64,000 nucleotides of DNA, from positions 39,866,001-39,930,000 of the forward strand of contig NC_043015.1 in the NCBI RefSeq assembly GCF_006345805.1, read 5' to 3'. Numbering within the stretch: the first letter of the stretch is position 1; each line of letters starts with the position of its first letter. This stretch comes from Octopus sinensis. Lineage: Eukaryota. Positions 6,762 to 51,756 of this stretch are shown here, piece after piece. The position numbers and the translations under genes are program-made. Below the pieces are notes generated by a model. It made no database searches and was not told where the DNA came from. It was given only the letters and a program-made list of their open reading frames with translations.

Positions 6762-6871
6762 GAACCTACCCACAAGGCTGTGCTGCGTTTCACATGATCT
6801 CCCCCAACATACAGATTGAGGAATCCTCTATAAAAGATGATTCCGGAATGCAGGATGTTCACTACACTGAT
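6762..6871 (+). CDS. DOCK9: DOCK-D exon ([37 protein letters not shown])
   Basis: ccaacag|ga acceptor and gat|gtaagt donor; resembles the DOCK9 GCTAFRVITPNIDEE..MQDVHF segment. Confidence 0.92.
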
Positions 6872-9800
6872 GTAAGTACTTACACACACACACACACACA
6901 CTCGCACTCACACACACGGATGCAAACCAACCATCACAGGTGAAAATCTGTGAAGTCAAAACAGCACTCTTTTTTTTCTTTCTTTTTTTACTCTTTTTAC
7001 TTGTTTCAGTCATTTGACTGCAGCCATGCTGGAGCACCGCCTTTAGTTGAGCAAATCGACCCCGGGACTTATTCTTTTGTAATCCCAGTACTTCTTCTAT
7101 CGGTCTCTTTTGCCGAACTGCTAAGTGACGGGGACGTAAACACCAGCATCGGTTGTCAAGCAATGCTAGGGGGACAAACACAGACACATACACACACACA
7201 TACATACATATATATATATATATACGACGGGCTTCTTTCAGTTTCCGTCTACCAAATCCACTCACAAGGCTTTGGTCGGTGCGAGGCTATAGCAGAAGAC
7301 ACTTGCCCAAGGTGTCACACAGTGGGACTGAACCCGGAACCATGTGGTTGGTAAACAAGCTACTTACCACACAGCCACTCCTGCGCCTGTATATTTTTTA
7401 AAATTATTTTTATTATTTGTATATATTTATTTTATTATAAATGCAAAACCACACCACGGAGGAACTGATGTAAGCTTCAATAATAAACGACAATAAACTG
7501 TGACCACCCCCATTCATTTTTAGGAATTCATACAACTATTAAGTGAGGAGCTACAGTTGCTATTTCTTGACGGACGAGGGACCCCAGTTGAGGCTCTTCT
7601 GTGTTGGGTGTAGAGAGGGTTGAGTGTTTGTTGATGAAGAAATACACATATCATTCCATGTTTTGTGTCTTGTGTTCCTGCAGAGTACGTTGATTGAGAA
7701 CCTGGAACAAGCAGCCCGAATCATAGAACAAGCTGAACGCTATGAAGTTTTAGGGGACATTTACAAACTCATTATTCCAATGTATGAAGTGGCCAGAGAC
7801 TTTGAGGTAAGCTATCATCATCATCGTCATCACCATCATCATCATCATCACCATCATCATCGTCATCATCATCATCACCACCATCATCACAGTCACCATC
7901 ATTATTATCACTACCACCATCATAATCATCATCATTATCATCATATTTATGTACATTATCTCTGACTACACCACCACCACCACCACCACGACTATCAACA
8001 ACATGGCCACCAACAATACCGCCGCTATCACTCAAAAAACGATGATCATCACCACTATCACCATCACCATCACATCAATTCTATCCTATTTTCCCATTCT
8101 CCCCTCTTTAAACGACAACCCCTATTTTAGTCATTTGTTGTGAAATAATTCCCATTTTTTTTTAACCAATTCTTAGATGCCTACACCCCCACCTCAACTC
8201 CCACCTCTCTCCCTCATTACCAATCCCAAGATGTCTCCCTCTCCCCCTCTCTCTCTTTACCAATTCTTAAATGTCCCCCCCTCTCCTCTCACTAATCTCT
8301 TATCCTTTAATTCTTCTTTTACAGAGATTATCTGAGACTTACCGCAAATTATTTGAAGCTTACAATAAAATCGTTGAAGTGATGCACTCTGGCAAACGGC
8401 TCCTTGGAAAATATTATCGTGTAGCATTTTATGGACAGGTAAGAATGATGTTTTTAGACAGGTAAGAATGCAAGCTTTTGGACAGGTAAAAATGGACAGG
8501 TAAGGATGCGATTTTTTGGACAAGTAAGAATGCAAGTTTTTTTAAAGAAATTTTGAGATGCAATTCAGTCTTGTCACCTGCCATCATTGCTGGATTCTTT
8601 CTGAGTGGTGGCACAGTGTGCCAGTGAGGGAATATTGGCTTTTGTTTGATATTTCATATTGTTTTTCCACTTCCAGATCCTTTACTCTAATGACTATAGA
8701 GATGACCAAGTGCAGGGCCCTTACCCCTGGCATGGTTTCTGTCATTCATTGGGGTTTAAATGGTTTTGCAACCCTGTAATGTTTCGGGTCTCAGAAATAC
8801 TTTACACAAGTCAGAGAGCTGGCAGAATCGTTAGCAGGCTGGGCGAAATGCTTAGCGATATTTCGTCTGCCGCTACATTCTGAATTCAAATTCTGCCAAG
8901 GTCAACTTTGCCTTTCATCCTTTCGGGGTCGATAAATTAAGTACCAGTTACGCACTGGGGTCGATGTAATCGACTTAATCCCTTTGTCTGTCCTTGTTTG
9001 TCCCCTCTTTGTTTAGCCCCTTGTGGGCAATAAAGAAATAAGAAACACTTTACACTTTGCACTAGAACTAATTGACATGACTTTTAAACACTAAATTTGT
9101 CTGTGACTGTTTCTGGTTATTTAGTTCCAGTATTCCTCAATCTGTTCTTAGGATGGTTTGTTGTCTTCGACTTGAATGCAATTCCATTCTATGATTCCTC
9201 ATGGAGAAGCTTTGTTGTTTCCACATCAAAATGCACCACTTGCATGCAATGTGTGTATGTACAGTTGTGGAGGAGAGATGAGTTAAGGTGTTGCACAGTT
9301 TTTGATTGACATTGGCTTTAACTGTTGGTTTTCAAACACTGCACTGCAGCACACTGGTGCACTGCGTCAGATATTTAGGTGCAGCTGAAAGGTTCAAGTT
9401 TTTAAATTTAAAAACGGTTCTCCTTTTAATTGCTCATGTATTGTTTCCACCAGAAATGTTTGGCCTCCATTCCACTGCAATGTCAAAAACTTTGAGATTC
9501 TCTGGTTTAAATGCTTGAAATCTTTGAACCCTATTTAAAATGTTTGAGTGAGAATATACGACAATATGTCTGAGGCACATTGATAGTTGTTTGGGTTAAG
9601 ATACAAATACTAGGTTAAACTAATATATCCAAAACAGATGAGTCTCTAGTCATATAATTACATCCTCGTTTAACATCCATTTCATATACTTATTTCTTTA
9701 TTACCCACAAGGGATTAAACACAGAGGGGACAAACAAGGACAGACAAACGGGTTAAGTCAATTACATGGACCCCAGTGCGTAACTGATACTTTATTTATC

Positions 9801-12175
9801 GAGCCTGAAAGAATGAAAGGCAAAGTCAACCTTGGCGGAATTTGAACTCAGAACATAGTGGCAGACGAAATACTGCTACGCATTTCTCCTGGTGTGCTAA
9901 CGTTTCTGCCAGCTTGCCGCCTTTTCATATGCTGGCATGGATTGGATGGTTCAATGAGAACTGACAAGCCAGAGGAACTGTGCTGAGTTCCAATGTCTGC
10001 CCCTTAATATGGTTCCTGCAGCTGGATGCCCTTCCCAATGCCAACCACTTTACAGAATGGACTGGGTGGTGCTTTTTACGTGGCACTGGTACTAGTGAGG
10101 TCACCAAGAAACTTACAAGACAAGATCCCTCATCTGAGATTGGGGTTCAGAATTGATGGAGGTGAAAGAATGATAGAGGGACAGGAACAGGTGTCTCGTT
10201 GAAGAGGAAATACAGGGTTACCCCAGCTGGAAAGTGAGAGGGAGAAATGGCGAGGAATTCTCAGATTATAGGGGTTAGATTGATAGGTAAGGTGTGGAGA
10301 TATTACAATAATATAAACAAGTTTCTTTATAATTGTGGTCACATGACCCTTTGATCATTTTACCTCTTGGCACTGATATGTTTTTGTATTTATTTTGTAC
10401 AAATTTTAGGCTCACTTTGATGAAGAAAACGGCAAAGAATATATTTATAAAGAACCTAAAGTGACCAACCTTTCAGAAATCTGTGACCGATTGTTCAATT
10501 TATATACATACCGCTACGGCAAAGAGAATGTGAAGTTGATTATGGATTCTAAGAAGGTTAGTTCTATAATTCTTCAGTGGTGGTCATGCTTGATGTGTTT
10601 GTTATTGTTGTTCCCACCATTTGTACGAAATCAATCTTTTATAACAGAAACCATCAATGGAATGACAACATCCCTCACTTTCTAATTAATTGCTTACTTT
10701 CTCCCCCCTCTCATTGTTCCATTATATTGTAACCTGCTCTGTCTACCAACCTCTAACTCTCTTTAGTACAATATGGACTGGTCTAACCACAGACCAAACC
10801 TTCTTCAGTGTAATTTGGACCAGTCTAACTTCAGACTTACTTCACATTAGTATAAGGTGAACTTATCCAACTTGTCACTTTTCCCCCATTTCAGTGTTAA
10901 CATGGAACTCTTCTCTGTTTTCAGGTGAATGTTGATGAACTTGACCCTAAATATGCCTTCATCCAGGTCACCTATGTAACCCCTTATTTCACTAAAGAAG
11001 AAAGTAAGGAACGACTCACAGAATTTGAACGCAACAACAACATACAGCGCTTCATGTTTGAAACCCCGTTTACGAAGAACGGACCTGCTCATGGCTCTAT
11101 CACGGAACAGTACAAACTACGGACAATACTGACCAGTAAGTCTCCCTTCTCACAGTTTGGCCCTCAATTTTTGGTCAGTCTAGCACTAACACACCTATGG
11201 CTTGTAAACAGCTGCTACGTTTGAGGGCTACATTACTGCATATTCTCACAAACACTGGCTAAGCGAGCAGGCCAACAGAAGAAAGAGTGAGAGAAAGTTG
11301 TGGCGAAAGAGTACAGCAGGGATCGCCACCACTCCCTGCCAGAGCCTCGTGGAGCTTTAGGTGTTTTCGCTCAATAAACACTCACAACGCCCTGTCTGGG
11401 AATCGAAACCGCAATCCTACGACCGCAAGTCCGCTGCCCTAACCACTGGACCATTGTGCCTTCACATATACACACACACACATGCACATGTGTACGTATA
11501 TGTGCACATGCACACGATATATTACATACTTCTGTCGCCTCTTCCACTGTAGCATTGTCTGCTGAAGCCTGATTTATTGGCGTCGAGAAACAAATGGCTC
11601 TGAAAATTTTTTGCCAATAATATTTCAGGTTTGAGCTAAAGGGAGATAACTGCCGTTGGCATGGTTTTTGATGAGGGATGTATTGAAAACCCAAACCTAG
11701 CGGCAACCATTGACAAATGATGACAAATTAAATGATGAGGTGCACAACCAACAGGTATCAATTAGAATTTACCATTTAGTTGGTGAAATAAAACAGACTT
11801 AGTGGCAATTCTAGCCATTGATCCAGTTGGCTTATTTTAGTTACCTCCCTTGATAATTCCAGTCGTTGATGGTTCTGTAGGGGTTGGCTGTTCTATTGAT
11901 TGCAACTCCCTCCCCCATCAACCTGTCCTCTTTTAGTTGTCCTAATGATACTGGTCAGCAGTGGTCAAGCTGATGTTATTCTCATACCAGGCTCTTGAAA
12001 TATAGGCGCAGGGGTGGCTGTGTGGTAAGTAGCTTGTTTACCAACCACATGGTTCCGGGTTCAGTCCCACCACGGGGCACTTTGGGCAAGTGTCTTCTAC
12101 TATAGCCCCGGGCCAACCAAAGCCTTGTGAGTGGATTTGGTAGACGGAAACTGAAAGAAGCCCGTCGTATATATG

Positions 12176-12206: not shown

Positions 12207-13069
12207 ATATGTGTGTGTGTATGTTTGTGTGTCTGTGTTTGTCCCCCAACATCGCTTGACAACCGATGCTGGTGTGTTTGCATCCCCGTAACTTAGTGGT
12301 TCGGCAAAAGAGATCGATAGAATAAGTACTGGGCTTACTGGGGTCGATTTGTTTGACTAAAACCCTTCAAAGCAGTTTCCAGCATGGCTGCAGTCAAATG
12401 ACTGAAACAAGTAAAAGAGTATAGTATGTATTATGCGATGTATCATGTCTGTCTGTCTGTTTGTCTCTCTCTCCAGCCTCGCACACCTTCCCGTACGTGA
12501 AGAAGAGAATAGAAATCATTGAACACATGGAGCAGGAACTGTCCCCCATCGAAGTAGCCATTGACGAGCTGCACAATAAAGTGATTGACCTTCAGGAAGT
12601 TGTCCGAGCTGTCACCCCTGACGTTAAGAAGCTCCATTTGAACCTACAAGGCTGTGTCAGTACCCAGGTACGGTAAACGTTATACACCCTACTTTCTACA
12701 TACATGGTATTTACGGATTTAACCCTTTAGCATTCAAACTGGCCAAAATATTCTGCTGGTTTTGTGTCCAAACGGACCAGATCAGGCCTCTCATGCATAC
12801 CCTGCAATGTTGTTCTAAGTATAAGCAAATGCATTGTCAAAATCTCGAAGCTATGAGACAAGGCATGGCGTGGCTGTGTGGTAAGAAGCTTGCTTCCCAA
12901 CTTCATGTTTCTGGGTTCATTCCCACAGCATGGTACCTTAGGCAAGAATTTTATTTTTTATAGCCTCAGATCAACCAAAACCTTCTGAGTGGATTTGGTA
13001 GATGGAAACTGAAAGAAGCTCATTGTGTGTGTGTGTGTGTGTGTATGTTGCACCTGAGCACTGTACACA

Positions 13070-13214: not shown

Positions 13215-15129
13215 ATCTATGTGTATCTATGTGTATGTGCTTTTGTGTCTTTATTTTTCCCACCTACCATCGCTTGACAACCAATGTTGGTGTGTTTATG
13301 TCCCTGTAACTTAGCAGTTTGGCAAAAGGGATTGATAGAATACAGACTAGATTTACAAAGAATAAGCCCTGGGGTCGATTTCTTCGACATAAAACCCTTT
13401 AAGATGGTTCTCCAGCATGGCTGCAGTCAAATGACTGAAACATGTAAAAGAATTAAAGAATAAAAAGAATTAAAGAATGAAAGAATTAAAGAACGAAAGA
13501 ATAAAAGAATGAAAGAATAAAAGAATGAAAGAATTAAATAATGAAAGAATTAAAGAAAAGAATTAAAGAATGAAAGAATTAAAAAATGAAAGAATTAAAG
13601 AATAAAAGAATTAAAGAATAAAAGAATGAAAGAATAAAAGAATGGAAGAAATGTTACATTTAACAGAGCAATCTGAATGCTAAATGGTTAAACAGATGTT
13701 CTCAATATTGGTGTCGGTGCCGTGTGTGTCTGCTGTGAGTGCTGGACAAGGTGTCTGCTACAAATGAAGAGACTGCAAAGAGCTTGCTGTTAAAGCTCCT
13801 CTGTTCTGACTCTGTTCTGTCTGTGTGTCCTCCCGCAGGTGCATGCTGGTCCGTTAGCCTATGCTGAAGCGTTCCTCAGTAAAGACAAAGTCAACAAGTA
13901 TCCAGTTGGTAAAGTGGCAGCACTCAAAGATGTCTTTAAGTAAGTCAGCATCATCATCATCATCATCTTCTTCTTCTCCTCCTCCTCCTCTTTCTCTTCT
14001 TCTCCTCCTCCTCCTTTTCCTCCTTCTTTTTCTCCTTCTTCTTCCTCTTCTTCTTTCTCTTCTTCTCCTCCTCCTCCTTCTCTTTCTATTCTTCTCCTCC
14101 TCTTTCTTTTTCTTTTCTTCTTCCTCCTCCTCCTCCTCTTCTTCTTATTCTCCTTTTTCTCCTTTTTCTCCTTTTTCTTCTCTTTCTCCTCCTCCTCTTC
14201 TTCTTTTTCTTCGTCTTTTTCTTCTCTTCGTCTTCTTTTCCTTCTCTTTCTCCTCCTCCTCTTCTTTTCTTCTTCTTCTTCTCCTCTTTCTCCTTCTCCT
14301 CCTCCTTCACCTCCTCCTCCTCCTTCACCTTCACCACACTTGTTGGCATCTCCCTTTTAATCTTTTGTCTCTGGCAAACCACCCTCTCTTCTTCTTCCCC
14401 TCCCTCTCAACTATACTCTCTCTCTCTCTCTCTCTGGTTATATCCACTGCATCCACCCACCCACCCACCTTCCACAGTAATCTAACCTCCTCCCCCCTCT
14501 CTCATTTCAGGAACTTTATCCATATCTGCAGTGAAGCGTTGGATTTGAATGCGAAACTCATTGAGACGGAACAAAAAGATTATCACGAATCTTTGAAGGC
14601 TGGTTTTAATGAAATCTACGAGAAACTAGGGGAGATTGTTGGAGATAAAGTAAGTGATACACACACACACACACACACACACTCTTCCTTGTCCTCCATC
14701 TCTCATCCTCTTCCTCTCCTATATCCCTCTTCCTCCTACTCTTTCCTTCTCTCTTTCCTTTCTACTCAATGTTTATACTTGTTTACAAACTTTCACATAT
14801 CCAAAATATGGTGGAGCTGAAAAACTTCGATCACCTCAGATTATCCAAGCAATCAGCAGACAAACACTTTCTCTACAGCTGTTTAAAACAAAGAAAAAAA
14901 AACATTTACACGGGAGGTAACTAATAAGATAAATTGATCAGTTTTTTTTTGTTTCTTTTTTTTCAATATAAATACAATATTGATTGGAGTGGGTTTGGTT
15001 CTTTTAGTGGCACCAACAGACATGTTGCTCTTTATAGATTCTGAATAATTTGGTTTTCTTTATTTCTTTAAGACTTTACCAACATCAAACAACCACTGTT
15101 AATATTGTTGCTTTTATTATTATTATTAC

Positions 15130-24100: not shown

Positions 24101-24743
24101 GAAACGAGGTAAGAATGGAACTTGTTGGTAGACACGGTTCCTGGTCTTTGCCAAGAGAACCATAATACAGCAACAGCTATGCAAAGGTTTGAACTTCTGA
24201 CCACGTGATTGGCAGGGCAGCACCTTATTCCAGTCATGGTTATGTAAATACTTTACATTGTAGATTATTTCCCCACAGGTGAGAGCAATCAACAGGTTTT
24301 GTATTGATAACAAGGGCGGCGAGCTGGCAGAATTGCTAGCACGCCGGACGAAATGCTTAGCAGTATTTCGTCTGTCTTTACGTTCTGAGTTCAAATTCTG
24401 CTGAGGTCGACTTTGCCTTTCATCCTTTCGGGATTGATTAAATAAGTACCAGTTACGCACTGGGGTCGATCTAATCGAATTAATACGTAAGTCTGGCCTT
24501 GTTTGTCCCCTCTATGTTTAGCCCCCTTGTGGGTAATAAAGAAATATGTATTGATAACAAAATTATTGTAAATGTTTGTATGTATACCTTGTTACCATGG
24601 CAACAGTTATTCATGTTTTTGGTCTCTCGTTCTCTCCGTAGCATTTCCTCTCCGGCCGATACAGCATTGGCAGCCTACCGGGCCGACATTCGGCATCCAT
24701 CATTAGTCTTCTCAATTCCACATCTGGAGCGAGTACCGTATGA
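6762..24743 (+). CDS. DOCK9: Dedicator of cytokinesis 9/10/11-like (Zizimin, DOCK-D) GEF, 3' part; join(6762..6871,7684..7806,8325..8438,10410..10556,10925..11135,12477..12667,13839..13939,14511..14649,24642..24743), 5' partial
   Basis: All introns are GT-AG with matching phases. The spliced product has DHR-2 hallmarks [75 protein letters not shown] and [17 protein letters not shown]. Co-orthologous to vertebrate DOCK9/10/11 (recognised from memory, no search run). Confidence 0.95.
6985..7390 (-). mobile_element. SINE family B, full length (bipartite with central TA/TG microsatellite)
   Basis: Reverse complement of the 12003 copy. Confidence 0.88.
7684..7806 (+). CDS. DOCK9: DOCK-D exon ([41 protein letters not shown])
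   Basis: ttcctgcag|agt acceptor, gag|gtaagc donor, phase 0/0. Confidence 0.95.
7812..8090. repeat. (CAT/CAC)n microsatellite directly after a donor
   Basis: Directly visible. Confidence 0.95.
8325..8438 (+). CDS. DOCK9: DOCK-D exon ([38 protein letters not shown])
   Basis: cttttacag|aga acceptor, cag|gtaaga donor, phase 0/0. Confidence 0.95.
8812..9043 (+). mobile_element. SINE family A
   Basis: Near-identical to the other copies. Confidence 0.88.
9697..9922 (-). mobile_element. SINE family A, reverse orientation
   Basis: Reverse complement of the family consensus. Confidence 0.85.
9925..10095 (-). mobile_element. Family C repeat (RTE 3'UTR-type retroposon)
   Basis: Reverse complement of gtaaaaagcacc...ggaagggcatccagctgtag...ccaacccatgccagcatg. 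Confidence 0.75.
10410..10556 (+). CDS. DOCK9: DOCK-D exon ([28 protein letters not shown]...VKLIMDSKK)
   Basis: ttttag|gct acceptor, aag|gttagt donor; EYIYKEPK motif. Confidence 0.95.
10925..11135 (+). CDS. DOCK9: DOCK-D exon ([22 protein letters not shown]...FMFETPFT...RTILT)
   Basis: tttcag|gtg acceptor, cca|gtaagt donor, phase 0/1. Confidence 0.95.
11225..11460 (-). mobile_element. tRNA-derived SINE (third family)
   Basis: Minus strand has A box tggtccagtgg and B box ggtttcgattcc followed by a non-tRNA body. Confidence 0.7.
12003..12420 (+). mobile_element. SINE family B, full length
   Basis: tRNA-like head, central microsatellite and gtaaaaga tail; shared with several copies in the window. 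Confidence 0.88.
12477..12667 (+). CDS. DOCK9: DOCK-D exon ([12 protein letters not shown]...[14 protein letters not shown])
   Basis: ctctccag|cc acceptor, cag|gtacgg donor, phase 1/0. Confidence 0.95.
12723..13687. mobile_element. piggyBac-type MITE (TTAA TSD) hosting a SINE B; a sister copy lies at about 52513-52708
   Basis: ttaa|ccctttagcattca ... tgaatgctaaatgg|ttaa. Confidence 0.75.
12862..13650 (+). mobile_element. SINE family B with expanded (aaagaatN)n tail, nested in a TTAA MITE
   Basis: Both halves present; about 200 bp of tandem 8-mer tail at 13445-13650. Confidence 0.85.
13839..13939 (+). CDS. DOCK9: DOCK-D exon ([34 protein letters not shown])
   Basis: cccgcag|gtg acceptor, taa|gtaagt donor, phase 0/2. 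The frame differs from the ORF-track entry at 13861. Confidence 0.93.
13950..14340. repeat. Polypyrimidine (CCT/CTT)n tract
   Basis: About 390 bp almost entirely C/T. Confidence 0.95.
14511..14649 (+). CDS. DOCK9: DOCK-D exon ([32 protein letters not shown]...GDK)
   Basis: catttcag|g acceptor, aaa|gtaagt donor, phase 2/0; end of DHR-2 lobe C. Confidence 0.93.
15175..15385 (+). mobile_element. SINE family A-related, diverged
   Basis: Shares the core ctgagttcaaat...ttgcctttcatccttt...gtaccag. Confidence 0.75.
20055..20175 (-). mobile_element. Family C repeat, partial
   Basis: Similarity to other copies in the window. Confidence 0.75.
21943..22150. repeat. Near-perfect inverted repeat (about 88-bp arms)
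   Basis: attctgttgtgtctggggagagtcatt... is mirrored by ...aatgactctccccagacacaacagaat. Confidence 0.9.
24314..24546 (+). mobile_element. SINE family A with 14-bp TSD
   Basis: TSD tgtattgataacaa at 24300-24313 and 24547-24560. Confidence 0.9.
24642..24743 (+). CDS. DOCK9: Probable DOCK-D terminal coding exon ([33 protein letters not shown])
   Basis: Strong pyrimidine tract tctctcgttctctccgtag|, a GC/CpG-rich island in AT-rich context, and phase 0. Ser-rich tail with a class I PDZ-type end, like DOCK9 C-termini. The junction to 14649 is inferred. Confidence 0.75.
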   Translation, partial: HFLSGRYSIGSLPGRHSASIISLLNSTSGASTV

Positions 24744-38283: not shown

Positions 38284-38315
<32 letters not shown>

Positions 38316-39177: not shown

Positions 39178-39223
<46 letters not shown>

Positions 39224-40454: not shown

Positions 40455-40802
40455 ACCGTGTGTGCGCGCACGTGTGTGTGTGTGTGAGTACATTTGTGAT
40501 GTGTGTACACGTATGTACTTGCATATGAAAGAGTGTGTGTGTGTGTGTGTGCGTGCGTACGTGTGTGTGTATATATATATATACATACACACGCATATAC
40601 ATATATGTATAAATGAATGTATGCACAGATATATATATGTATGCACATATATATATATATATGTATGTATACATATATACACACATGTATAGAAGTATAT
40701 CTATGTTTATATGTGTGTGTATATATATATATATATATATAATATATATATATGTATGTATACATATATACACACATGTATAGAAGTATATCTATGTTTA
40801 TA

Positions 40803-40834
<32 letters not shown>

Positions 40835-40879
40835 CATACACACACACATATACATATATGTATAAATGAATGTATGCAC

Positions 40880-40913
<34 letters not shown>

Positions 40914-40985
40914 ACATATATATATACACATGTATAAAAGTATATCTATGTTTATATGTGTGTGTGTATATATATTTATATATTC
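40455..40985. repeat. TA/TG/CA microsatellite complex with higher-order duplications
   Basis: An about 60-bp block occurs three times. Confidence 0.9.
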
Positions 40986-40995
40986 ATGGGAGTTC

Positions 40996-41264
40996 TTAAA
41001 AAAACAAATGAGTGTATAATAGTTGAGAGGTGAATACTAGGCTGAGTACGGCCACTGACCAGTGCGGCGCTCTGGCCGATGACCGATCGTCAGGCGCAGG
41101 TCTGAAAGATTTGGTACGCGGAGTAGTGGATGCAAAGTAGTAGCCGTCAGTGTTTGATTGGTGTTCATTGTTTTCCTTGTACGTGATGGAATCGTCCTCA
41201 TGATCACCACTGCCCGATCCACTGAGGTCATCGTAACCACTGCTGTCCCCACTGCCGTAGATGT
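40996..41264 (-). CDS. GPC6: Glypican last coding exon ([25 protein letters not shown]...[31 protein letters not shown])
   Basis: cttctccttgcag|ac acceptor; five Ser-Gly sites in acidic context (HS attachment) and a small-residue omega site plus hydrophobic tail (GPI); TAA at 40996-40998. Confidence 0.95.
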
Positions 41265-44200
41265 CTGCAAGGAGAAGAGAGAAGAAAAAGAAAGATGGTT
41301 AGGTTGAGTGACGGTGGGAGGAGATAGTGTGAAGCTTGGAGGGGTAGGAGTGGGGGTGTAATGATTTAGGAACACGTTTAAGAGCCCTTGTGGTTCCACA
41401 TAAAAAGAGCCTGTGCAGTGTCACATGAAAAGAACTTGTGTGGTGCCATGTAAAAAGAGCCCTTGTGGTGCCATGTACAAAGAGCCCTTGTGGTGCCATG
41501 CAAAAGCGCTCGTGTGGTGCCATGTAAAAAGAGCCCTTGTGGTGCCGTGAAAAAACACCCATACGGTGGTATGCACAAAGAGCCCTTGTGGTGCCATGAA
41601 AAGGTGCCCGTGCGGTGCCATGTAAAAGGAACCCTTGTAGTGGCACGTAAAAGCACCCAGCTGTAGAAACCATGCCAAAGCAGACTGGTGGTTGGCAAGC
41701 AAATGACCAGTGAATGAAGTGAGTGTGATAATTACTACAAGTCCTAAAATCAGTGGCCCCTAACTGTGGCACAGCTCTCACCTTTGCAGTCACTTAACCA
41801 TGAAGTGTTGTTGTTGTTTAACCAAGTCAAACCCCAAATCAAGGCATTCTAACCACAGCCATTTTGTCTCATTAGGGGTCCATTAAGACGACATTACTTA
41901 AGGTCTTCTTTCTCAAGATTGTGTGTTTAGATTAAAAGGAAACCTTGCTGCTATTTCGAAGAAGACCACTATATTGCACAATCGTGGGCAAACAGAAACC
42001 CACAGGATTTTCTGAATGGCATACCTAAAAGAAAAATTCCACTGAACTTTTTTTTTTTCAGATGTGTGGGTTACCTGGTGATGCTTCCTGTCTCCTAAGG
42101 TCCACTTCTCAAAAAAGGTGGCCCATGCATGATAGAGAGACATTGGCCTGAGACCAATGGTCAACAGTTACACACTGCTCAGAATGATGGTCACCTAGCA
42201 ATTAAAAACCAATAATGTGACCACAGGAAGATCCACTTTTAAACCATTGATCCCATAATTTAACCCTAAATACGAGGGCCTTAAACATTTTCTGCTCTCA
42301 ATCTTTTAAGTTAGACCCCAATGAAGAACAAGCTTCTGTGGTCATATATTACTGACACCCATCACCTGTAGACAACCTTTTTATGAACCCCTTATCCACA
42401 ACAACCATGCATCAATGGATACCTAAGGGTCCACATTCCCCTAAATCATCAGCACAGTCATTACTCCCTCACCACCCGTTTTCCAATGATATATTGCCCC
42501 TGTCCCCTACCCATCAACAACTGGACAAAGCAATGTTTAAGTTTTAACCTTTAATTTCCCCAAAATAAATCACCTTTATTAATTCCAACCATAAACCTTC
42601 ACTCAACATCTCTCTACCCCACCTTCACTCAATACCTCTCTACTCCCACTTTCACCCAACACTTCCATCTCCCACCTTCACTCAACATCTCCTTTCCCTA
42701 CCTTCACTCAAAACTTCCTTTCCTCTACTTTCACTCAACACCTCATTTACCCCACCTTCACTCAAAGCCTCCTCTTCCTACGTTTACTCAACACTTCCCT
42801 CCCATTACCTTCACTCAACACCTCCCACTTTCACTCAAAGCCTCCTCTTCCCACTTCACTCAGCATCTCACTCCTCTTACCTTCACTCAGCATCTCCCTC
42901 CCCCACCTTCACTCAACATCTCTCTACCCCACCTTCACTCAATACCTCTCTACTCCCACTTTCACCCAACACTTCCCTCCCATTACCTTCACTCAACACC
43001 TCCCACTTTCACTCAAAGCTTCCTCTTCCCACTTCACTCAACACCTCCCTTCCCCCTACTTTCACTCCACACTTCCCTCCCCCCTTACATTCACCAAACA
43101 CTCAACACTCCTCCCTCTCCCCCACTCACCGTTTATCAAAGACTCCACGTCCTCCCCGTTGTATGCGTCCTCCAGCTTCATCGTTATACTCCTCAGCTGC
43201 GTCATCTGATATGAAATCACGGTCTTCATTTGCTTCAATTCGGGATCCGAGTCTTCCGACAGATCCGTTTCGTCCTTCAGCATCACAGACCAATCACTAA
43301 CGGCAACAAGACCACAAGAACAATTACTAGACATGTAAACACAAACAGTTTAATAAAATACAAATGATGTTGTGATGTTCATGCAGTTTTTAAAGCAAAA
43401 CATAACAAAAGACATCAGAAACTTGTCTGATATCAGCTCGGCTCTGATCGAGTAAAGTTACGAATCAAAGTTGGTCCAAACATGACCACTCTGTTTAAAT
43501 ATAAAAGACACGACATTCTTTTATTTGTTTCAGTACTTATTCTATTGGTCTGTTTTGCCGAACTGCTAATGTTACGGGGACGTAAACAGACCAGCATTGG
43601 TTGTCAAGCCACATTGGGAGGACAAACACAGATGCACACACACACACACATTTATATCTCTCTCTATAAATATAAAGCTGAAGTTGTCTGTGTGTGGCAG
43701 GTTTGGTAGCCTTCAACTAACACTATCTCCTCCGAGACCCTCCAGCGCAAGTTGACCAAAATTGAGAGTATGATAGAAGAAGGCTTGCTCTTCATTCCGT
43801 AGAAGAAAAAATTCAAACCGGACCACGTTAACACCAAAAATTATTTTCATCAAAAAGGTGCTTTTTTTTCTATGAAAATCCCTATTTTTTTACGATTTTT
43901 TGACTGCTGTGTCGCCATTTTTCGGTGTATTTCAACCAGAAAAATGTTCACTTCAAGAGAACAACAAGCTACATAATGCAAAATTTTTACTTTTTAAAAA
44001 TTCCAATTCTGAAGGGTCGAAACAAACCCGAGCAACACTGCTAGTATATATATAAATATAAAAATGGAACAAAAACACAATAGAGGACAACAAAAACATT
44101 CGGAGAGAGAGAGAGAGATGATACAAAGGCAGACAAGAGAAACCACAATTAGGACAGGCAAAAAAAGATGGGTCCAGGCTTCTTTCAGTTTCTGTCAACC

Positions 44201-45185
44201 AAATCCACTCACAAGGCTTTAGTCAGCCCGAGGCTATAGTAGAGGACACTTGCCCAAGGTGCTACACTGGGACTGAACTTGGAACCATGTGGCTGGTAAG
44301 CAAGCTACTTATCACGCAGCCAGTCTTGTGCATAAATAATAATAATAAATATCAGCTTACAGTTTATAAGTGGTCACCGTGTATTGACCAAAGAAAATAA
44401 TCTACTATTAGACTATTTTTTTAGTCAATATACAGCAATTTGCTTATAAGCTATAACTTATAAAATTGTCACTCATCACCACTTCTCAACTCATCGCAGA
44501 CATATATATATATATATGTATATATATATGTGTATAGCATTAAAAAAAAAAAGGTTCAGTAAAATTGTATTACATACATATTAGAATGAAACCACTATGT
44601 GGACACCCTTATACTAGAAATAGATCCAAGATTTTCTTGAGAAAATTTCTTAGTGGTAAGACCATAGCGGATCTATTTCTAGCAAAAGGGTGTCCACATA
44701 GCGGTTTCCCTCTATGTATATATATGTATATATAAAGAGAGAGAGATGCATGATAGATACATAGATGGAGAGATAGATAGATGTATAATAAATAAAATTA
44801 CCTGTCTTTTCCATTTGCAGACCAACAATTTTCTTCGTTAGGTGTCATGGCTGTGACCGAGGACAGGTTACCTAACGTCACCTGATATTTACTGACTGGA
44901 GCACCTCTTGAAGACAGAGATTCTTTGCATACAAAATAAGGGACATTTATCCAGAAGTCGTAGGCTATTTTGACTTTGTCAGTAATGTCCCGTACAAGCC
45001 GGTCGAGACTCGTTCCAGCAGCTGTGATTGGCCGTTTAAGGTTCTTCTTTGAGGGCCATTCATAAACGAACTTTTCATGTACCATATTGTCTGCATGTCT
45101 TGGAACTCGTGAGGATGGGTGGCCACATTTGGCAGAAGCCTAGGAAGAATATACACAATTAAGTCACATGTTAACAACAACAATA

Positions 45186-45237: not shown

Positions 45238-48200
45238 CCCTGATGCAGTACCGGACAGTGGCTCTCATGGCTTCTGATCTTAATTGATTGGAAGTGTCAT
45301 CTTGTACATTGTTTTGTCTTGGTATAAAAGATGGGCTACAGCAAATATTCTGCTCAATACCACAGATTTGCTTGTCAGTTGTTTGACCTTAACCAGTTGA
45401 GCATGTCCCTTAGTGGCTGACGATATGGGCATCTCTGATCACGAGCAGAAGTAGTGGGGGAGCATCATAGCCATGTGTTGAGAAGGATTCTTTGGGATTT
45501 GAATAATTCACCTTTGGAAACATGGGTGATTTGTTCAACATCCTTAAACAACCCTTATTCAGGGACATTTTGAGTGGGATGGACTACTCAACCTGAAGGA
45601 AATTCTAACTGGGCCCCACCTGCAAGGCCATGCATTATCTTGAGATCACCATGTCACACACATATGGTTGTGATGCATGTGCCTGGTGTACCCTTATCAG
45701 ACAGGTAGTCATGATGGATATACTGGGCTTTGTATATTTGTACCCCAAGTGTCACTTTGATGGCATGAACTGCTCTCTCATCATCATCATCATCATCGTT
45801 TAACGTTCGTTCTCCATGCTAGCATGGGTTGGACGGTTCGATCGGGGATCTGGGAAGCCAGAAGGCTGCCCCAGGCTCCGGTCTTATCTGGCAATGTTTC
45901 TACAGCTGGATGCCCTTCCTAACACCAACCATAATAATAATAATAATGATGGTGATAATAATCATGGTTTCTGATTAGGAATAAGGATTAGGGGGTTAAT
46001 TGACATCAGTGAACCCAGCACTTGAGTAATGCTTCATTTTATCAAGCCCAGAGGAATGAAAGGCAAAGTGAATATTGAGGTGGATTTGAACTCGGAATGT
46101 GAAGATCTAGAGATGAGTACCTCAAGACACAGTTTCTGATTCTTTCAACAGATTCTGCCAATAATGGTTTGCTTTGTTGTTTTTAGCACAAAACCGTTTT
46201 ACAGAATCACAGAATAAAATTGTATTAAATTCACACAGTCTTGACATATTGTGGTGGTGGTGGTGTGTGTGTGTGTGTGTGTGTGTGTGTATTGTAGTAC
46301 AGTGATACGATAGAGTAGGTGGCGAGCTGGCAGAACCGTTAGCACGCCGGACGAAATGCTTAGCGGTATTTCATCTGCCGCTACGTTCTGAGTTCAAATT
46401 CCGCCGAGGTCGACTTTGCCTTTCATCCTTTTGGGGTCGATTAAGTAAGTACCAGTTACGCACTGGGGTCGATATAATCGACTTAATCCCTTTGTCTGTC
46501 CTTGTTTGTCCCCTCTGTGTTTAGCCCCTTGTGGGTAGTAAAGAAATAGATACGATAGAGTAGTGGTATAACATGGTTGTGCAGAGTGATAGCATTGGTC
46601 TTTAACCCCAGTTAATCCTAATTAAGCAGACACCAATGACCACAGACATTCCGGCCATAATCCTCCAAGTCATTTTGGAGGAATCTACAATTATTATGTC
46701 TTGTGCGTTTTTTTTCCTTTTATGGTGTGATACGAGCAAAGTTTTTGGCCAAAGTGATCTATCATACATTTGCTAAATAAGAGCTCTCTCATATTAGGGA
46801 GGCAAGATCCAGGCTTACTAGGATTTGAACTCAGATAAGACAGCTTTCACCTCATCAACTTCTGTGTCCCACAAATGTGACAAGGGATGAAAAGGACTTG
46901 TGAGATTGAAACTTGGCCATTACGGCGAAATAACATCAACAAAATTTAAAATTCAACATAAAAATGTAAACTGGATCTCATTTGACAAGATATGTTGAAT
47001 TGGTGTGAAACTGGCTGAGTATACCAAACGTGTTTCTTTAATGTAGTTCTCCAGAAGAATCAGCAAAACACATCACATGATAAGACTAGACCTTTATATT
47101 ATTGCTATCATCCATCTGATGGGATTCCACATAGTTTCCACCAGCTCAGTTTCACTCAAAAGGTACAGGACAACCTGAGCAGGTGACATCAGACACTTAC
47201 CCAAGACGGCATGCAGAGGAATTGAACCAAAGACCATCTGTTTGTGGCACGACCTTCTTAGCCATTCAGTCATGACCATGGAAACACAAGACTCCGGCTG
47301 TCGGGTTAGTTTTGTCTGGGAAGAATTAGAATTACGGCAGGAAGGCTTACCATGTGTTCCTGTTCTTTTAAGAAGAGAGGTTGATCAGATACAGGAACAG
47401 GAGGATTGGAACTCCTGGTTCGATACTCTGCAATGGGGCCACATACACAAAATTAATCAAAAACCTTCCAAAAGTCAGCAACAAACAAGAGGCAAAAATC
47501 TCTTCCGACCAATTCCAGAAGGGATTACATAACACACCAAGTGGGGACAGACGATCCTCTAAAGAATAGGCAAATATAGCAATTAGAGTACAGTATACCA
47601 TTTAGAGTACAATTCCAATACTCAGGAAACCATCCCATTCATCTCATCGGAGATGAAACATAATACTCCAGAAAAAGCCATTCCAGTAATTAACCCCTTA
47701 CCCGGCAGAAACGAATATATGCGTTTTGACCAAAATCGTTTTTTTCTATCTCTGGCGAGTTAACTAGTCAAAAGATAGACTCGCCAAAACATAGTAAAAT
47801 AAAACAATTAAAAAATATGTCTGAAAAAATACATTTATTTTCAAAATAATTGTTGGGTAAGGGGTTAAGGTATAACCGAAGTACCCCAGAGACCATTCCA
47901 GTGTCTAAAAGAATTAACAGAGTCATACTTACTTGTTCTGTGACTGCAGCTGCTTTGTTCTGGAAAGACATGATGGCATCTGATATTTTAACATTGATGG
48001 GATCAATAACAGATTCTATGTTGAAAGGTCCATTCAGTTGCTGCGTTATCTTCTCCAGGGCATCTGCACAACATAACGAGATTTAATTAAAGGATTCGTT
48101 AGAACAGAAAAGACTTCAAGAACAACTGACAGAGACTTAGTTTGAATGGGATGCAGCTGAAGTTGGTGTCAGGGTGAGGAACCACCGGTGCCTGCTTCCG

Positions 48201-51200
48201 AGTGAAACGACGACAGAAGTTCTTAGCAAAGAAGTCCCTAAACGTGGCATTCATTGACAAAGGGAAGAGCTTTGATAGGGGTCTGCTCTCAGGAGCCTGG
48301 TGGTTCCTAAGGAAGCCATGTGCTGGGGAATGGCAGTGAGATGTGTGCAGAGGTGAGAGGATAATTAACAGGTTCAATGAGAAATTTAGAGTAGGGGCAA
48401 GTGTCCATTAGGGTCCAGTCTTCAGCCACTCCCTGTTTATTAAGGGTCTCCTGATGATAACAGAGCAGTTCAAAACTGGATGCCTGTGCTGACAACCTAA
48501 TTCACTTAAGCAAGCGATCCACGGAATTACAGGAAAATTCCAAATATGGAAACAGATCTTAGAAACAAGACAGACAGTATCACTAAATTTGGTTGTTTTG
48601 TGTTGTTAAGGTTAGCAAGAAAATCTGGATGAAGGTCAATGATCCAACCCCATGCCGGTTTGGAAATACAAACATAAAAAGGGATCTCTTCAGTATTTCC
48701 CTCTGAAAGTTGAAGAGTCTGAGAATCCGCTAGAGGGAAGCACTGGGCAAATGCTGTGTTTTTACATCTTTTTAGCATAAGAAAGAATTTTTTCTCTAAA
48801 GTAACTGCTTTAGCAATTAAAATATGTCACAAACATATTTTAATTAACCCTAAGTTCATTTATTTCTAATCACTGCTTGGCACTAATGCTGCTATTTTTA
48901 AATAACTGCCCTACATGTTTCCTGGTAGCCTCCTGGGTCTACAGGTGTGGTTATATCTCCTGCCAAGTATCCAGAGATGATGGGTGTGGCTACATCTCCT
49001 GGGAAGTATCCAGAGACTATGGGTGTGGCTCCATCTACCAAAAATCTATTTGAGGCAATGGACATGGCTCCGCCTACTGGGATTTTAACAGTAATATATT
49101 AATTATATGAGCAAGACACTTTATTCTTCACATTGCTCCAGTTCACTCAGCTGTAGGAATGAGTTGTGACATCACTGGTGCCAAGCTGTATCGGCCCCTT
49201 TGCCTTTCCCTTGGATAACATTGGTGGTGTGAACAGGGTAAGCTGGTACACATGGGCAACTGCTGGTCTTCCATAAAACAACCTTGCCCAGACTTGTGCC
49301 TCAGAGGGGAACTTTCTAGGTGCAATCCCATGGTCATTTTTGACCGAAGGAAGTCTCTATCCTTTACATGAATTATTTATCAATTTTGCCTTTCAACCTA
49401 AAATAATGTTGGGAGGGTCAATGTAATCTTCCATAGTGCTCCAGCATGGCCTGGATGAGAAGAAACATCTGTGATGTGGTTTCAAATCTCATTGCTTCTC
49501 GGTAATAAAATACTTTTCTAAACAATTGTAAATAATGGAGAAGCAAGGACTGGTGTGGGAAGCAGAGTAACAAATGCAAGTGAGGTGGTAGAATTGGTGG
49601 AGGGCAGGACCAAAGGCCTTGCAATATTTAGCCAAATACTGTTAGGTTCTGAGTTCAAATTCAGACAAATCCAACTTCACGTTTTTATCTTTGGAACCAG
49701 GAAAAATTGGCATCAGTCAAGTATGGCAATTGGTATAATCAATTCTACCATTCCTAGCTGTAGGACTAAGTTAAAAATTAATATTAATTATTATTATTAT
49801 TAAAGGCGGCAAGCTGGCAGAAACGTTAGCACGGCGAAATGATTATCGGTATTTCGTCTGTGGTTACGTTCTGGGTTCAAATTCCGCCGAGTTCGACTTT
49901 GCCTTTCATCCTTTCGGGGTTGATAAATTAAGTACCAGTTACGCACTGGGGTCAATGTAATCGACTTAATCCGTTTGTCTGTCCTTGTTTGTCCCCTCTG
50001 TGTTTAGCCCCTTGTGGGTAGTTAAAAATAAAAACTTATTATTATTATTATTATTAAGTGCAGTGGATATCAGGATTGGTAGCCTGGTGGTATAAAGGTG
50101 TGATGGAATGGCAGTCCAATGGTATAAGTGCCGTGTAAAGCATACTTATGTCTTTTCATGTTCTCAGTTCAATTCCTGCCAAGTTCAAGTTTTGTCTTTC
50201 CTCTTCCTGGGGTTGGTATAATAAAGTACCAGTCATGAACTGGGATCCATGTACCCCTTGTGGCTATGTCAGAAATTAATATCATAGTTATTATCATGAT
50301 GAGAATTAATATGTGGAAACTTCAAATAATTATATGAAACATGTTAATGAGATTTGATTAACGAAGTAGAACCAGTTAAAGTGTTATTAATAATTCAAAA
50401 TCAATACAATTTGTTGCTATGGAAACTAAACTAACATAAAATTTAATTATTTGCCTATCATTAAGTGACAAAAAAATAACATAATTACAACATTCCCTTT
50501 ATTATTCCCTGGTTTGGTTTGGTTGGATAAGTTTGTAAATTTATATATTTCCTAGTAGTCTGATATAACACAAGATGTTACATTTGGATGCACTGATAAA
50601 GGAGTACTCAATACATGTAATAGAGTATGTTTGTTCAAAGCTGTACTTTCACTCTACTGTCACTCACGAGTTTTCCTCTATACATGTTCCATAAACTTGA
50701 AGGATCACTCACATACATATACATTGTGCTGGTGCCATGTAAAAGGCACACTTAGACCACTCTGTGGAATGGTTGGTGTCAGGAAAGGCATCCAGCCGTA
50801 AAAACCCTGCCAGACTCGGTTAGTAGCCTGCACTCTTAACCACTACGTCTTATACCCGTGGGCAAGTATGGAGTGAATTTTAGGGCTTATAAATCTAATA
50901 TTTTCCTATCTTTCTTTAATGTTCTGCGGCATATAAAAAAAGGGGGGTACACTGCATGATGTAATCCTAGAATGTAATCCATTATGTAATCCTGACATAA
51001 GACATGATGGTCATAGGTGGCATGTCTTTAATCATAGCTCTGTTGGATCAGGTCAGACCTGGGGCAAAACGACAATAAAGAACATGAGATGTTGCAGTCC
51101 TAGATACACTGTGGTTGGATAAAAGACAAGATGACTAGATGGAATATCTCTGATCATAGGTCTGCTGGATCAGAACTGACTCGGGGCTAAACAACAACAT

Positions 51201-51756
51201 CAACAAGCACAATATTTTCATATATCACAGTGTTTAGTGTCATCTACTGGTCACGTGTTCAAATCCTGATGGAATCTGTCACCATAAATACCAGTGGTAT
51301 TCTGGGGTTGACTGACCTTGTTTCTTCAATAATAAGTTCTGTGCTGAAACAATATTAGATTTATGTGACTAGACTGGAATATAATCAAAAGCAACCCAAC
51401 CATGACCACCTCTTTTACTCAGCCAAAGTGTAACTAGGACTACATTATCTAATATGTTGTTCCTTCCTTAAATACTGGAGGTGATTCAAGGCAGATTTAG
51501 CTGCTATTGCAGGCATGCTGCACAACCACATAGAAGTTGTCCTGTTAAACATAAAAAAAAAGGAAACTGGTGAGGAGAGCGAAGCCTTACGTATATAAGC
51601 ATTCCACACATCGTTGAACTGTTTGTGATAAGGCTGACATGCTTCAATGGTTTTCATACAATAGTTTGTGCAGGGTTTCTTGTGAGGAACTTGGTTACAG
51701 CGCTGGCAGTACATCATCTGCGCCAGACTGCGAGCACAGCGCTTGGTTGGTTCAAT
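40996..51756 (-). CDS. GPC6: Glypican, dally-like / GPC1-2-4-6 class, 3' part; complement(join(40996..41264,43130..43296,44802..45139,47933..48063,51591..51756)), 5' partial
   Basis: Phase-consistent GT-AG exons. Conserved Cys pattern [10 protein letters not shown]...KPC.NYC...C, plus [53 protein letters not shown], a Ser-Gly cluster and a hydrophobic GPI tail. The symbol is the nearest vertebrate co-orthologue, not a 1:1 call. Confidence 0.95.
41380..41660 (+). repeat. 25-bp minisatellite (about 11 units) derived from the family C head
   Basis: Unit atgtaaaaagagcccttgtggtgcc, head to tail, ending in tggcacgtaaaagcaccc. Confidence 0.9.
42590..43120 (+). repeat. About 20-22-bp C-rich minisatellite
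   Basis: Units of the type cccaccttcactcaacacctc. Confidence 0.9.
43130..43296 (-). CDS. GPC6: Glypican exon ([10 protein letters not shown]...[38 protein letters not shown])
   Basis: gccgttag|t acceptor (an alternative in-frame acceptor lies at 43326), acg|gtgagt donor, phase 2/1. Confidence 0.88.
43515..44330 (-). mobile_element. SINE family B split by a Helitron-like insertion
   Basis: 3' half at about 43515-43640 and 5' half at about 44175-44330. Confidence 0.75.
43657..44044 (+). mobile_element. Non-autonomous Helitron-like element
   Basis: A|TC start, CTAG|T end, no TSD, truncated subterminal cccgagcaac hairpin arm. Confidence 0.65.
44590..44706. repeat. Inverted repeat (about 38-bp arms)
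   Basis: aaccactatgtggacaccctt..ctagaaatagatcc / ggatctatttctag..aagggtgtccacatagcggtt. Confidence 0.85.
44802..45139 (-). CDS. GPC6: Glypican exon ([14 protein letters not shown]...[14 protein letters not shown]...NCWSANGKD)
   Basis: cttcctag|gct acceptor, cag|gtaatt donor, phase 0/2; contains an RxxR convertase-type site after CGHP. Confidence 0.95.
45780..45930 (-). mobile_element. Family C repeat
   Basis: Similarity to other copies, (cat)n tail. Confidence 0.8.
46319..46548 (+). mobile_element. SINE family A with 15-bp TSD
   Basis: TSD gatacgatagagtag at 46304-46318 and 46549-46563. Confidence 0.9.
47694..47864. mobile_element. piggyBac-type MITE
   Basis: ttaa|ccccttaccc ... gggtaagggg|ttaa. 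Confidence 0.8.
47933..48063 (-). CDS. GPC6: Glypican exon ([44 protein letters not shown])
   Basis: ttgtgcag|at acceptor, caa|gtaagt donor, phase 1/0; not present in the ORF track. Confidence 0.95.
48140..48600 (+). mobile_element. Decayed RTE LINE reverse-transcriptase fragment
   Basis: [22 protein letters not shown]...WWFLRK and [17 protein letters not shown]...FKTGC match RT motifs (KAFD, HQGS.LSP.LF). Confidence 0.8.
48944..49081 (+). repeat. 39-bp tandem repeat, about 3.5 units
   Basis: ggtgtggctacatctcctgggaagtatccagagactatg and variants at an exact 39-bp period. Confidence 0.8.
49803..50030 (+). mobile_element. SINE family A
   Basis: Near-consensus copy following an (ATT)n tract. 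Confidence 0.88.
51591..51756 (-). CDS. GPC6: Glypican exon ([55 protein letters not shown])
   Basis: cattgcag|att acceptor, tac|gtaagg donor, phase 0/1. Confidence 0.95.

What the first reader, a model, noticed from the sequence alone, without database searches (positions are those of the whole stretch)
6762..51756. DOCK-D and dally-like glypican are direct neighbours, mirroring three vertebrate paralogons
Seen: a DOCK9/10/11-type gene (+) and a GPC1/2/4/6-type glypican (-) converge with about 16 kb between stop codons and no recognisable gene between them. Known: in human, DOCK9 (13q32) is linked to GPC5/GPC6 (13q31-32), DOCK10 (2q36) to GPC1 (2q37), and DOCK11 (Xq24) to GPC3/GPC4 (Xq26). 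Inference: this is a relic of a bilaterian DOCK-D/glypican linkage. It would have survived as strict adjacency in a lineage known for extensive genome rearrangement, possibly held by shared intergenic or 3' regulation.
Basis: partly seen in the sequence, partly recalled or inferred. Interest (0 to 1): 0.72.

Follow-up and report, generated by a model that had tools for sequence, protein, structure and literature searches.

The report
Ancient DOCK-D and glypican neighbour pair
In this octopus window a DOCK9-type gene and a dally-like glypican gene end tail-to-tail 16 kb apart, and the same arrangement is found in an oyster and an annelid worm, so it is an inherited piece of old gene order of an already familiar kind.

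Summary
The window (Octopus vulgaris/sinensis) holds the last 10 coding exons of a DOCK-D gene on + (1291-24743). It also holds the last 5 coding exons of a Dlp/GPC1/2/4/6-class glypican on - (51756-40996). The stop codons are 16,252 bp apart, and no Pfam, Rfam or tRNA hit lies between them.

The same convergent pair, with no gene between, occurs in Crassostrea virginica (7.2 kb spacer) and Capitella teleta (2 kb or less). The adjacency therefore dates at least to the mollusc-annelid ancestor and is not an octopus coincidence.

At bilaterian depth I could show only same-chromosome linkage (nemertean, abalone, three bivalves, two hemichordates, one bird). The genes are not adjacent in amphioxus (Med11 follows the glypican), in the hemichordate Glandiceps (a RagA-like gene follows) or in the nemertean Tubulanus (2.2 Mb apart). 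They lie on different chromosomes in Babylonia. In the octopod Argonauta an EF-G-like gene sits where DOCK would be.

There is no evidence for or against shared regulation; no noncoding sequence is conserved between phyla. This is a new example of a known kind, conserved microsynteny, and of moderate interest.

The parts
1291..1348 (+). DOCK-D coding exon (residues about 1728-1747 of P0182, DHR-2 lobe A). The 5' boundary is approximate.
   Evidence: tblastn and exact-match walk
6762..6871 (+). DOCK-D exon ([15 protein letters not shown]...HYTD).
7684..7806 (+). DOCK-D exon, DHR-2 lobe A
   Evidence: Pfam PF06920, E 2.6e-8
8325..8438 (+). DOCK-D exon
10410..10556 (+). DOCK-D exon
10925..11135 (+). 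DOCK-D exon, DHR-2 lobe B
   Evidence: Pfam PF20422, E 1.4e-28; PDB hits
12477..12667 (+). DOCK-D exon, start of DHR-2 lobe C
13839..13939 (+). DOCK-D exon ([13 protein letters not shown]...)
14511..14649 (+). DOCK-D exon, end of DHR-2. A 10-kb final intron follows.
24642..24743 (+). DOCK-D last coding exon ([10 protein letters not shown]...SGASTV) plus stop TGA at 24741-24743
   Evidence: 100% match to the C-terminus of P0182
24744..40995 (.). Spacer of 16,252 bp between the two stop codons. It must include both 3' UTRs. About 20% of it is repeated elsewhere in the window. No recognisable gene.
40996..41264 (-). Glypican last coding exon: SG/SGSGSG glycosaminoglycan attachment sites, hydrophobic GPI-signal tail, stop TAA at 40998-40996
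43130..43296 (-). Glypican exon (residues 459-514 of P0001)
44802..45139 (-). Glypican exon (residues 347-458)
   Evidence: Pfam PF01153
47933..48063 (-). Glypican exon (residues 303-346)
   Evidence: Pfam PF01153
51591..51756 (-). Glypican exon (residues 248-302), the most 5' one in the window. Residues 1-247 are encoded beyond the window.
   Evidence: Pfam PF01153

Best explanation
The pair is an inherited piece of gene order. A DOCK-D (zizimin-type Cdc42 GEF) gene and the Dlp/GPC1/2/4/6-type glypican gene already lay tail-to-tail, with nothing between them, in the common ancestor of molluscs and annelids. Octopus, oyster and Capitella still have that arrangement. Deeper in Bilateria only the looser state is demonstrable: both genes on the same ancestral chromosome. 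The three human DOCK/GPC paralogons reflect that looser state.

Shown: the gene identities, the adjacency and orientation in three lineages, and same-chromosome linkage in further phyla.

Inferred: why the pair persisted. I think passive retention is the most likely reason. Only a break inside the short 3'-3' spacer (2-16 kb) can separate the genes without damaging one of them. Both genes are very long, and the promoter of each lies at its far end, away from the junction. The pair therefore decays slowly and has simply not yet been broken in these three lineages, whereas it was broken in several others.
For: - Octopus: convergent pair, 16,252 bp between stops, no gene between.
- Crassostrea virginica CM130318.1: Dlp-class glypican P0304 (GPC1 352 bits, GPC3 156 bits). 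A 2213-aa DOCK-D gene (PH, DOCK_C-D_N, TPR_DOCK9, DHR-2) lies on the opposite strand 7.2 kb downstream. Its last exon maps to L004 43159-43070 on the minus strand.
- Capitella teleta KB292506.1: Dlp-class glypican P0011 (GPC1 385 bits, GPC3 161 bits). A 2081-aa DOCK-D gene lies on the opposite strand about 2 kb downstream. The octopus DHR-2 region aligns to L006 26801-24347 on the minus strand at 43-68% identity.
- Breakability: 2.2 Mb apart in Tubulanus; other neighbours in amphioxus, Glandiceps and Argonauta; different chromosomes in Babylonia.
- Ancestral microsyntenies are known to survive in part in cephalopods (PMC9023564).
Against: - Only three positive species, and one look-up each.
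- The look-up tool shows only 10 kb of flank. Haliotis and Ptychodera (no neighbour within 10 kb) are therefore uninformative about adjacency.
- Argonauta, the closest relative sampled, does not show DOCK next to the glypican. If that annotation is right, the pair is not fixed even within octopods.
- Passive retention is an inference. Survival in a genome as reshuffled as a coleoid's could equally reflect regulatory constraint, which I could not test.
Confidence: 0.7

Rival explanations
1. Regulatory constraint, as in a genomic regulatory block or bystander model, or shared 3' regulation. Enhancers or a common chromatin domain serving one gene lie in the spacer or inside the partner gene. Rearrangements that split the pair are then selected against.
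For: - Same order and orientation across more than 500 million years in three lineages, one of them a heavily rearranged coleoid.
- Conserved metazoan microsyntenies in cephalopods tend to be co-expressed, to sit centrally in TADs, and to be enriched for Wnt-pathway components (PMC9023564). Glypicans are Wnt/Hh co-receptors (established knowledge).
Against: - The pair is broken in a nemertean, neogastropods, a hemichordate, amphioxus, vertebrates and apparently Argonauta.
- A word-size-7 blastn of the octopus spacer against all seven fetched loci, oyster and Capitella spacers included, found only low-complexity hits.
- No expression or chromatin data were available.
Confidence: 0.27
2. The strict adjacency itself is ancestral to Bilateria. 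It was later loosened independently in deuterostomes, nemerteans and others.
For: - Same-chromosome linkage in hemichordates and a bird as well as in spiralians.
- From memory and unverified here: in human 13q and Xq the GPC4/6-type gene is the glypican nearer to the DOCK gene and faces it convergently. That is the order expected from an expanded ancestral pair.
Against: - No deuterostome or ecdysozoan with the adjacency was found. Amphioxus has Med11 and Glandiceps has a RagA-like gene 3' of the glypican.
- No DOCK exon is detectable in any deuterostome locus fetched.
- In Priapulus the two genes are on different scaffolds, which is weak evidence.
Confidence: 0.25
3. Coincidence: the two genes were brought together secondarily in the octopus lineage by rearrangement within the chromosome.
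For: Coleoid genomes are extensively reorganised (PMC9023564). Argonauta shows a different 3' neighbour.
Against: The same pair, orientation and lack of an intervening gene are found in oyster and Capitella. Independent origin three times is very unlikely. My rough estimate, not a computed result: about 2/n for adjacency times 1/4 for orientation per lineage, with n in the thousands of genes per chromosome.
Confidence: 0.03

Closest known systems
Vertebrate DOCK-D/glypican paralogons: GPC5-GPC6...DOCK9 on 13q31-32, GPC3-GPC4...DOCK11 on Xq24-26, GPC1...DOCK10 on 2q36-37 (established knowledge; one bird scaffold checked here)
   Same: The same two gene families share a chromosome in each paralogon, consistent with one pre-duplication linkage.
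   Different: The genes are megabases apart with many genes between them. That is macro-linkage, not adjacency.
Conserved metazoan microsynteny blocks, genomic regulatory blocks and bystander-gene pairs (for example as analysed in cephalopods in PMC9023564)
   Same: Order and orientation of orthologous neighbours kept across phyla for more than 500 million years, and still present in a coleoid genome.
   Different: This is only a two-gene unit, and glypican occurs nowhere in the two supplement sets I searched. There is no evidence yet of shared regulatory elements, co-expression or a common TAD. The pair is absent from the deuterostomes sampled.
The tandem glypican cluster (GPC3/GPC4, GPC5/GPC6), described as conserved in Eumetazoa (PMC3828384)
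   Same: In oyster a second glypican lies head-to-head upstream of the Dlp-class gene. In Tubulanus a second glypican lies downstream, after an eIF4E gene. The DOCK-D pair may therefore be the edge of a three-gene unit.
   Different: The octopus window ends inside the glypican gene, so a second glypican cannot be seen. The class of the second gene is only weakly indicated for Tubulanus (GPC3 23 bits against GPC1 15 bits) and not at all for oyster.

Membership tests
DOCK-D (zizimin; DOCK9/10/11) subfamily | A DHR-2 catalytic domain is present | tested here: met
   Pfam DHR-2 lobes A and B reach the curated cut-off on window exons; lobe C matches below it (19.6 bits against 26) on one exon. The model aligns end to end with the DOCK9 DHR-2 crystal construct.
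DOCK-D (zizimin; DOCK9/10/11) subfamily | Closer to DOCK9/10/11 than to the DOCK-C, DOCK-A or DOCK-B subfamilies | tested here: met
   447 bits to DOCK9 and 414 to DOCK10, against 280 to DOCK6 over the same region and 57 to DOCK5 and 47 to DOCK2 over most of it
DOCK-D (zizimin; DOCK9/10/11) subfamily | N-terminal PH domain plus the DOCK_C-D_N region | tested here: met
   These lie outside the window. The annotated protein P0182, whose residues 1728-2158 match the window exons (two split-codon residues aside), carries PF00169, PF11878 and PF28208.
Glypican, Dlp/GPC1/2/4/6 subfamily | Glypican domain with 14 conserved cysteines | tested here: met
   Pfam PF01153 on four window exons. P0001 has 14 Cys after the signal region. 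The figure of 14 conserved Cys comes from PMC3828384.
Glypican, Dlp/GPC1/2/4/6 subfamily | C-terminal Ser-Gly glycosaminoglycan sites and a hydrophobic GPI-anchor signal | tested here: met
   SG at 519 and 523, SGSGSG at 529-534, and the tail ...[21 protein letters not shown], all in the last window exon. Read directly from the sequence; no GPI predictor was run.
Glypican, Dlp/GPC1/2/4/6 subfamily | Groups with Dlp/GPC1/2/4/6 rather than with dally/GPC3/5 | tested here: met
   Dlp 248, GPC1 230 and GPC2 199 bits against GPC3 132 bits. The best named relatives are 'glypican-6-like' and Platynereis 'GPC1-6'. No tree was built, because no GPC3/5-class sequence was in hand.
Ancient conserved microsynteny (spiralian depth) | Orthologous genes adjacent, in the same relative orientation, with no intervening gene, in distantly related lineages | tested here: met
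   Octopus, Crassostrea virginica, Capitella teleta
Ancient conserved microsynteny (bilaterian depth) | The adjacency is also present in deuterostomes or ecdysozoans | tested here: not met
   Amphioxus has Med11 3' of GPC6. Glandiceps has a RagA-like gene. Ptychodera has nothing within 10 kb. No DOCK exons were found in those loci. Ecdysozoans were not adequately sampled.
Bilaterian chromosome-scale linkage (same ancestral linkage group) | Both genes on one chromosome in several phyla | tested here: met
Babylonia differs. Tubulanus coordinates confirm one chromosome, 2.2 Mb apart.
Genomic regulatory block / bystander pair | Conserved noncoding elements, a shared TAD or co-expression linking the two genes | tested here: inconclusive
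   Blastn found no conservation of the spacer across phyla, but none would be expected at that distance. Chromatin and expression data cannot be tested with these tools.

The most novel reading that the evidence does not exclude
The tail-to-tail DOCK-D/Dlp-glypican pair, possibly with the second glypican as a third member, is a functionally constrained regulatory unit that goes back to the bilaterian ancestor. Enhancers or a shared chromatin domain couple a Cdc42 GEF with a morphogen and synapse-organising proteoglycan. The three vertebrate paralogons are stretched remnants of that unit.
Probability: 0.12. Interest if true: 0.6.

Novelty: new member of a known kind. Interest (0 to 1): 0.38.

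Why it matters
This is a clean, easily scored marker of ancestral spiralian gene order that has survived in a coleoid genome otherwise known for large-scale reshuffling. It polarises the vertebrate 13q/Xq/2q DOCK-glypican linkage: a tight pair in spiralians and a loose one in deuterostomes. It also offers a simple two-gene test of whether retained microsynteny in cephalopods reflects regulatory coupling or slow neutral decay. It does not reveal a new kind of genomic feature, and no functional link between the two proteins is implied by the data.

Tried and rejected
1. I guessed by eye that the last DOCK exon was read in the frame ...SISSPADT...QQIW*. The phase did not fit. The annotated O. sinensis protein shows the same exon read in another frame (HFLSGRYS...ASTV*), with the stop at 24741-24743.
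2. I looked in the window for an EF-G-like gene, the 3' neighbour of the glypican in Argonauta. Motif scans and a tblastn with bacterial EF-G found nothing.
3. Pfam on the ten longest ORFs between 18.9 and 38.3 kb (two intronic, eight in the spacer) gave nothing at curated level. An ORF at 28188-28574 looked to me like a LINE reverse-transcriptase tail, but it has no Pfam hit.
4. Rfam and tRNA scans of the whole window found nothing.
5. A cross-phylum search for conserved noncoding sequence, octopus spacer against all fetched loci, gave only microsatellite-like hits.
6. Look-ups of DOCK isoforms P0183 (oyster) and P0219 (Ptychodera) failed because only the longest isoform is on record. The Ptychodera distance therefore remains unknown.
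7. Literature searches found no paper reporting this pair. In the held supplementary text of PMC9023564 and PMC8851819, 'glypican' does not occur at all. The one Euprymna/O. bimaculoides block with a DOCK gene lists no PH domain and so is probably DOCK-C. Both files were truncated when stored. Supplements of the three-spiralian-genomes paper are not held.
8. A single-exon search of the representative library returned mostly fragments. It was useful only for obtaining a full-length DOCK-D query.
Full report
**What is in the window**

The sequence is AT-rich animal DNA, full of microsatellites and short interspersed repeats.

On the + strand, stop-free stretches carry Pfam DHR-2 lobes A, B and C. 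With GT-AG boundaries read from the DNA they splice into a 378-aa model. That model aligns end to end with the DHR-2 crystal constructs of human DOCK9 (447 bits) and DOCK10 (414 bits). It scores 280 bits against DOCK6 over the same region, and 57 and 47 bits against DOCK5 and DOCK2.

A full-length nemertean DOCK-D, obtained through a single-exon search, served as query to fetch named orthologues. One of these is Octopus sinensis 'dedicator of cytokinesis protein 9 isoform X3' (P0182, 2158 aa; PH, DOCK_C-D_N, TPR_DOCK9, C2, DHR-2). Its residues 1728-2158 match ten window exons from about 1291 to 24740, apart from two residues whose codons are split across introns, followed by TGA at 24741-24743. 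One more exon lies upstream at about 1291-1348. The last intron is 10 kb long.

On the - strand, five exons from 51756 down to 40999 carry Pfam Glypican positions 228-544 in order. Spliced together, they are 100% identical over their whole length to Octopus vulgaris 'glypican-6-like' (P0001, 603 aa). Residues 1-247 are encoded outside the window, and the annotated gene spans 124 kb.

P0001 has 14 cysteines after its signal region, SG/SGSGSG sites and a hydrophobic C-terminal tail. Against solved structures it scores Dlp 248, GPC1 230 and GPC2 199 bits, but GPC3 only 132. It is therefore the Dlp/GPC1/2/4/6 type.

**The spacer**

The two stop codons are 16,252 bp apart (24744-40995).

- The ten longest ORFs tried between 18.9 and 38.3 kb (eight of them in the spacer) have no Pfam family at curated level.
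- There is no Rfam family, no tRNA and no EF-G-like sequence.
- About 20% of the spacer is repeated elsewhere in the window.
- The public annotation shows no gene within 10 kb of the glypican.

**Is the adjacency more than chance?**

The parallel with three human chromosome regions is not, by itself, more than chance. Two neighbours in any bilaterian tend to belong to the same ancestral linkage group. Their vertebrate relatives are therefore expected to share paralogous chromosomes. The informative test is gene order in other phyla, so I looked up the genomic places of glypican and DOCK-D orthologues. The tool shows 10 kb of flank.

Positive cases:

- **Crassostrea virginica (bivalve).** The Dlp-class glypican P0304 (GPC1 352 bits, GPC3 156 bits) is followed 7.2 kb downstream, on the opposite strand, by a 2213-aa DOCK-D gene. 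I confirmed on the DNA that the C-terminal exon of oyster DOCK9-like proteins maps to L004 43159-43070 on the minus strand.
- **Capitella teleta (annelid).** The Dlp-class glypican P0011 (GPC1 385 bits, GPC3 161 bits) is followed about 2 kb downstream, on the opposite strand, by a 2081-aa DOCK-D gene. The octopus DHR-2 region aligns to L006 26801-24347 on the minus strand.

Octopus, oyster and Capitella thus share the same two orthologues, the same convergent orientation and the absence of any gene between. Independent assembly three times is not credible. The arrangement was present at least in the mollusc-annelid ancestor.

Negative or looser cases:

- **Tubulanus polymorphus (nemertean).** Same chromosome, but 2.2 Mb apart and in tandem orientation.
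- **Branchiostoma lanceolatum.** Med11 follows GPC6.
- **Glandiceps talaboti (hemichordate).** A RagA-like GTPase gene follows the glypican, although both genes are on one chromosome.
- **Ptychodera and Haliotis.** Nothing lies within 10 kb, but both genes are on the same chromosome.
- **Babylonia (neogastropod).** Different chromosomes.
- **Argonauta hians (an octopod).** The convergent neighbour 8 kb 3' of the glypican is an EF-G-like gene, not DOCK. I could not see further.

That is 7 of the 8 comparable invertebrate species. They also share a 13-Mb scaffold in a parrot.

**Interpretation**

The adjacency is a relic, demonstrably spiralian (mollusc plus annelid). At bilaterian depth only chromosome-scale linkage is shown.

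On why it persisted, there is no direct evidence either way. The pair has been broken repeatedly, in a nemertean, neogastropods, deuterostomes and perhaps Argonauta. The two invertebrates outside octopus that keep it are, from general knowledge, slow-rearranging genomes. Only a break inside a 2-16 kb 3'-3' spacer can separate two very long genes without damaging one of them. I therefore favour passive retention over regulatory constraint, at roughly 2:1.

Constraint remains a live rival. Conserved metazoan microsyntenies that survive in cephalopods tend to be co-expressed and to sit centrally in TADs (PMC9023564). No sequence in the octopus spacer is conserved with the oyster or Capitella spacers, but that says little at such evolutionary distance.

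**Comparison with what is known**

- The two glypican subfamilies, and the GPC3/GPC4 and GPC5/GPC6 clusters, are documented; the GPC3/GPC4 cluster is described as conserved in Eumetazoa (PMC3828384).
- A second glypican next to the Dlp-class gene in oyster (head-to-head) and in Tubulanus (after eIF4E) fits that picture. The DOCK-D gene may sit at the edge of an old three-gene unit.
- I found no paper reporting a DOCK-D/glypican pair, and glypican does not occur at all in the held microsynteny supplements.

**Verdict**

The feature is real and correctly described, and the relic idea is confirmed at spiralian depth. It is a new example of a well-known phenomenon, conserved microsynteny. It is not a new kind of feature, and there is no evidence yet of function in the linkage.

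Noticed in passing
   Followed up: yes
window 5244-5343: A run of exactly 100 N, which is an assembly gap, inside a DOCK intron.
   Followed up: no
window 1-137, 2387-2635, 3558-3806, 8792-9040, 24297-24545, 46300-46548, 49783-50031: An interspersed repeat of about 250 nt, SINE-like, with 7 copies at 65-91% identity. One copy ends about 100 bp before the last DOCK exon. ARAGORN finds no tRNA-like part. Other families are at 58.0-63.9 kb, 12.0-13.4 kb and 27.4-27.8 kb.
   Followed up: partly
window 13858-14817, 42555-43211, 53866-54700: Long low-complexity or tandem tracts that create spurious ORFs of 220-320 codons. The one at 53.9-54.7 kb has a 9-12 nt period and strong GC skew. The tract at 13.9-14.8 kb surrounds two real DOCK exons.
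   Followed up: partly
L004 1-1222 (C. virginica); L002 25955-27239 (Tubulanus): A second glypican gene lies next to the Dlp-class one. In oyster it is head-to-head, 8.8 kb upstream. In the nemertean it is downstream, after an eIF4E gene. One Tubulanus exon scores better to GPC3 (23 bits) than to GPC1 (15 bits); the oyster exon gave no signal. This echoes the vertebrate GPC3/4 and GPC5/6 clusters.
   Followed up: partly
Argonauta hians, glypican locus of P0002 (no DNA returned): The convergent gene 8.2 kb 3' of the glypican is a 755-aa EF-G-family gene (possibly mitochondrial EF-G), not DOCK-D. No such gene is in the octopus window. Whether this is an insertion or a break is unresolved.
   Followed up: partly
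window 28188-28574 (+): A 129-codon ORF (…ILLYGSETWTLSKK…) that looks to me like the tail of a LINE reverse transcriptase. It has no Pfam hit, so this rests on my impression only.
   Followed up: partly
window 25092, 25827 (+) and 37305 (-): These are the first canonical poly(A) signals after the two stop codons. If used, the 3' UTRs would be about 0.35-1.1 kb (DOCK) and about 3.7 kb (glypican), leaving roughly 11 kb between the transcripts. There is no transcript evidence.
   Followed up: no
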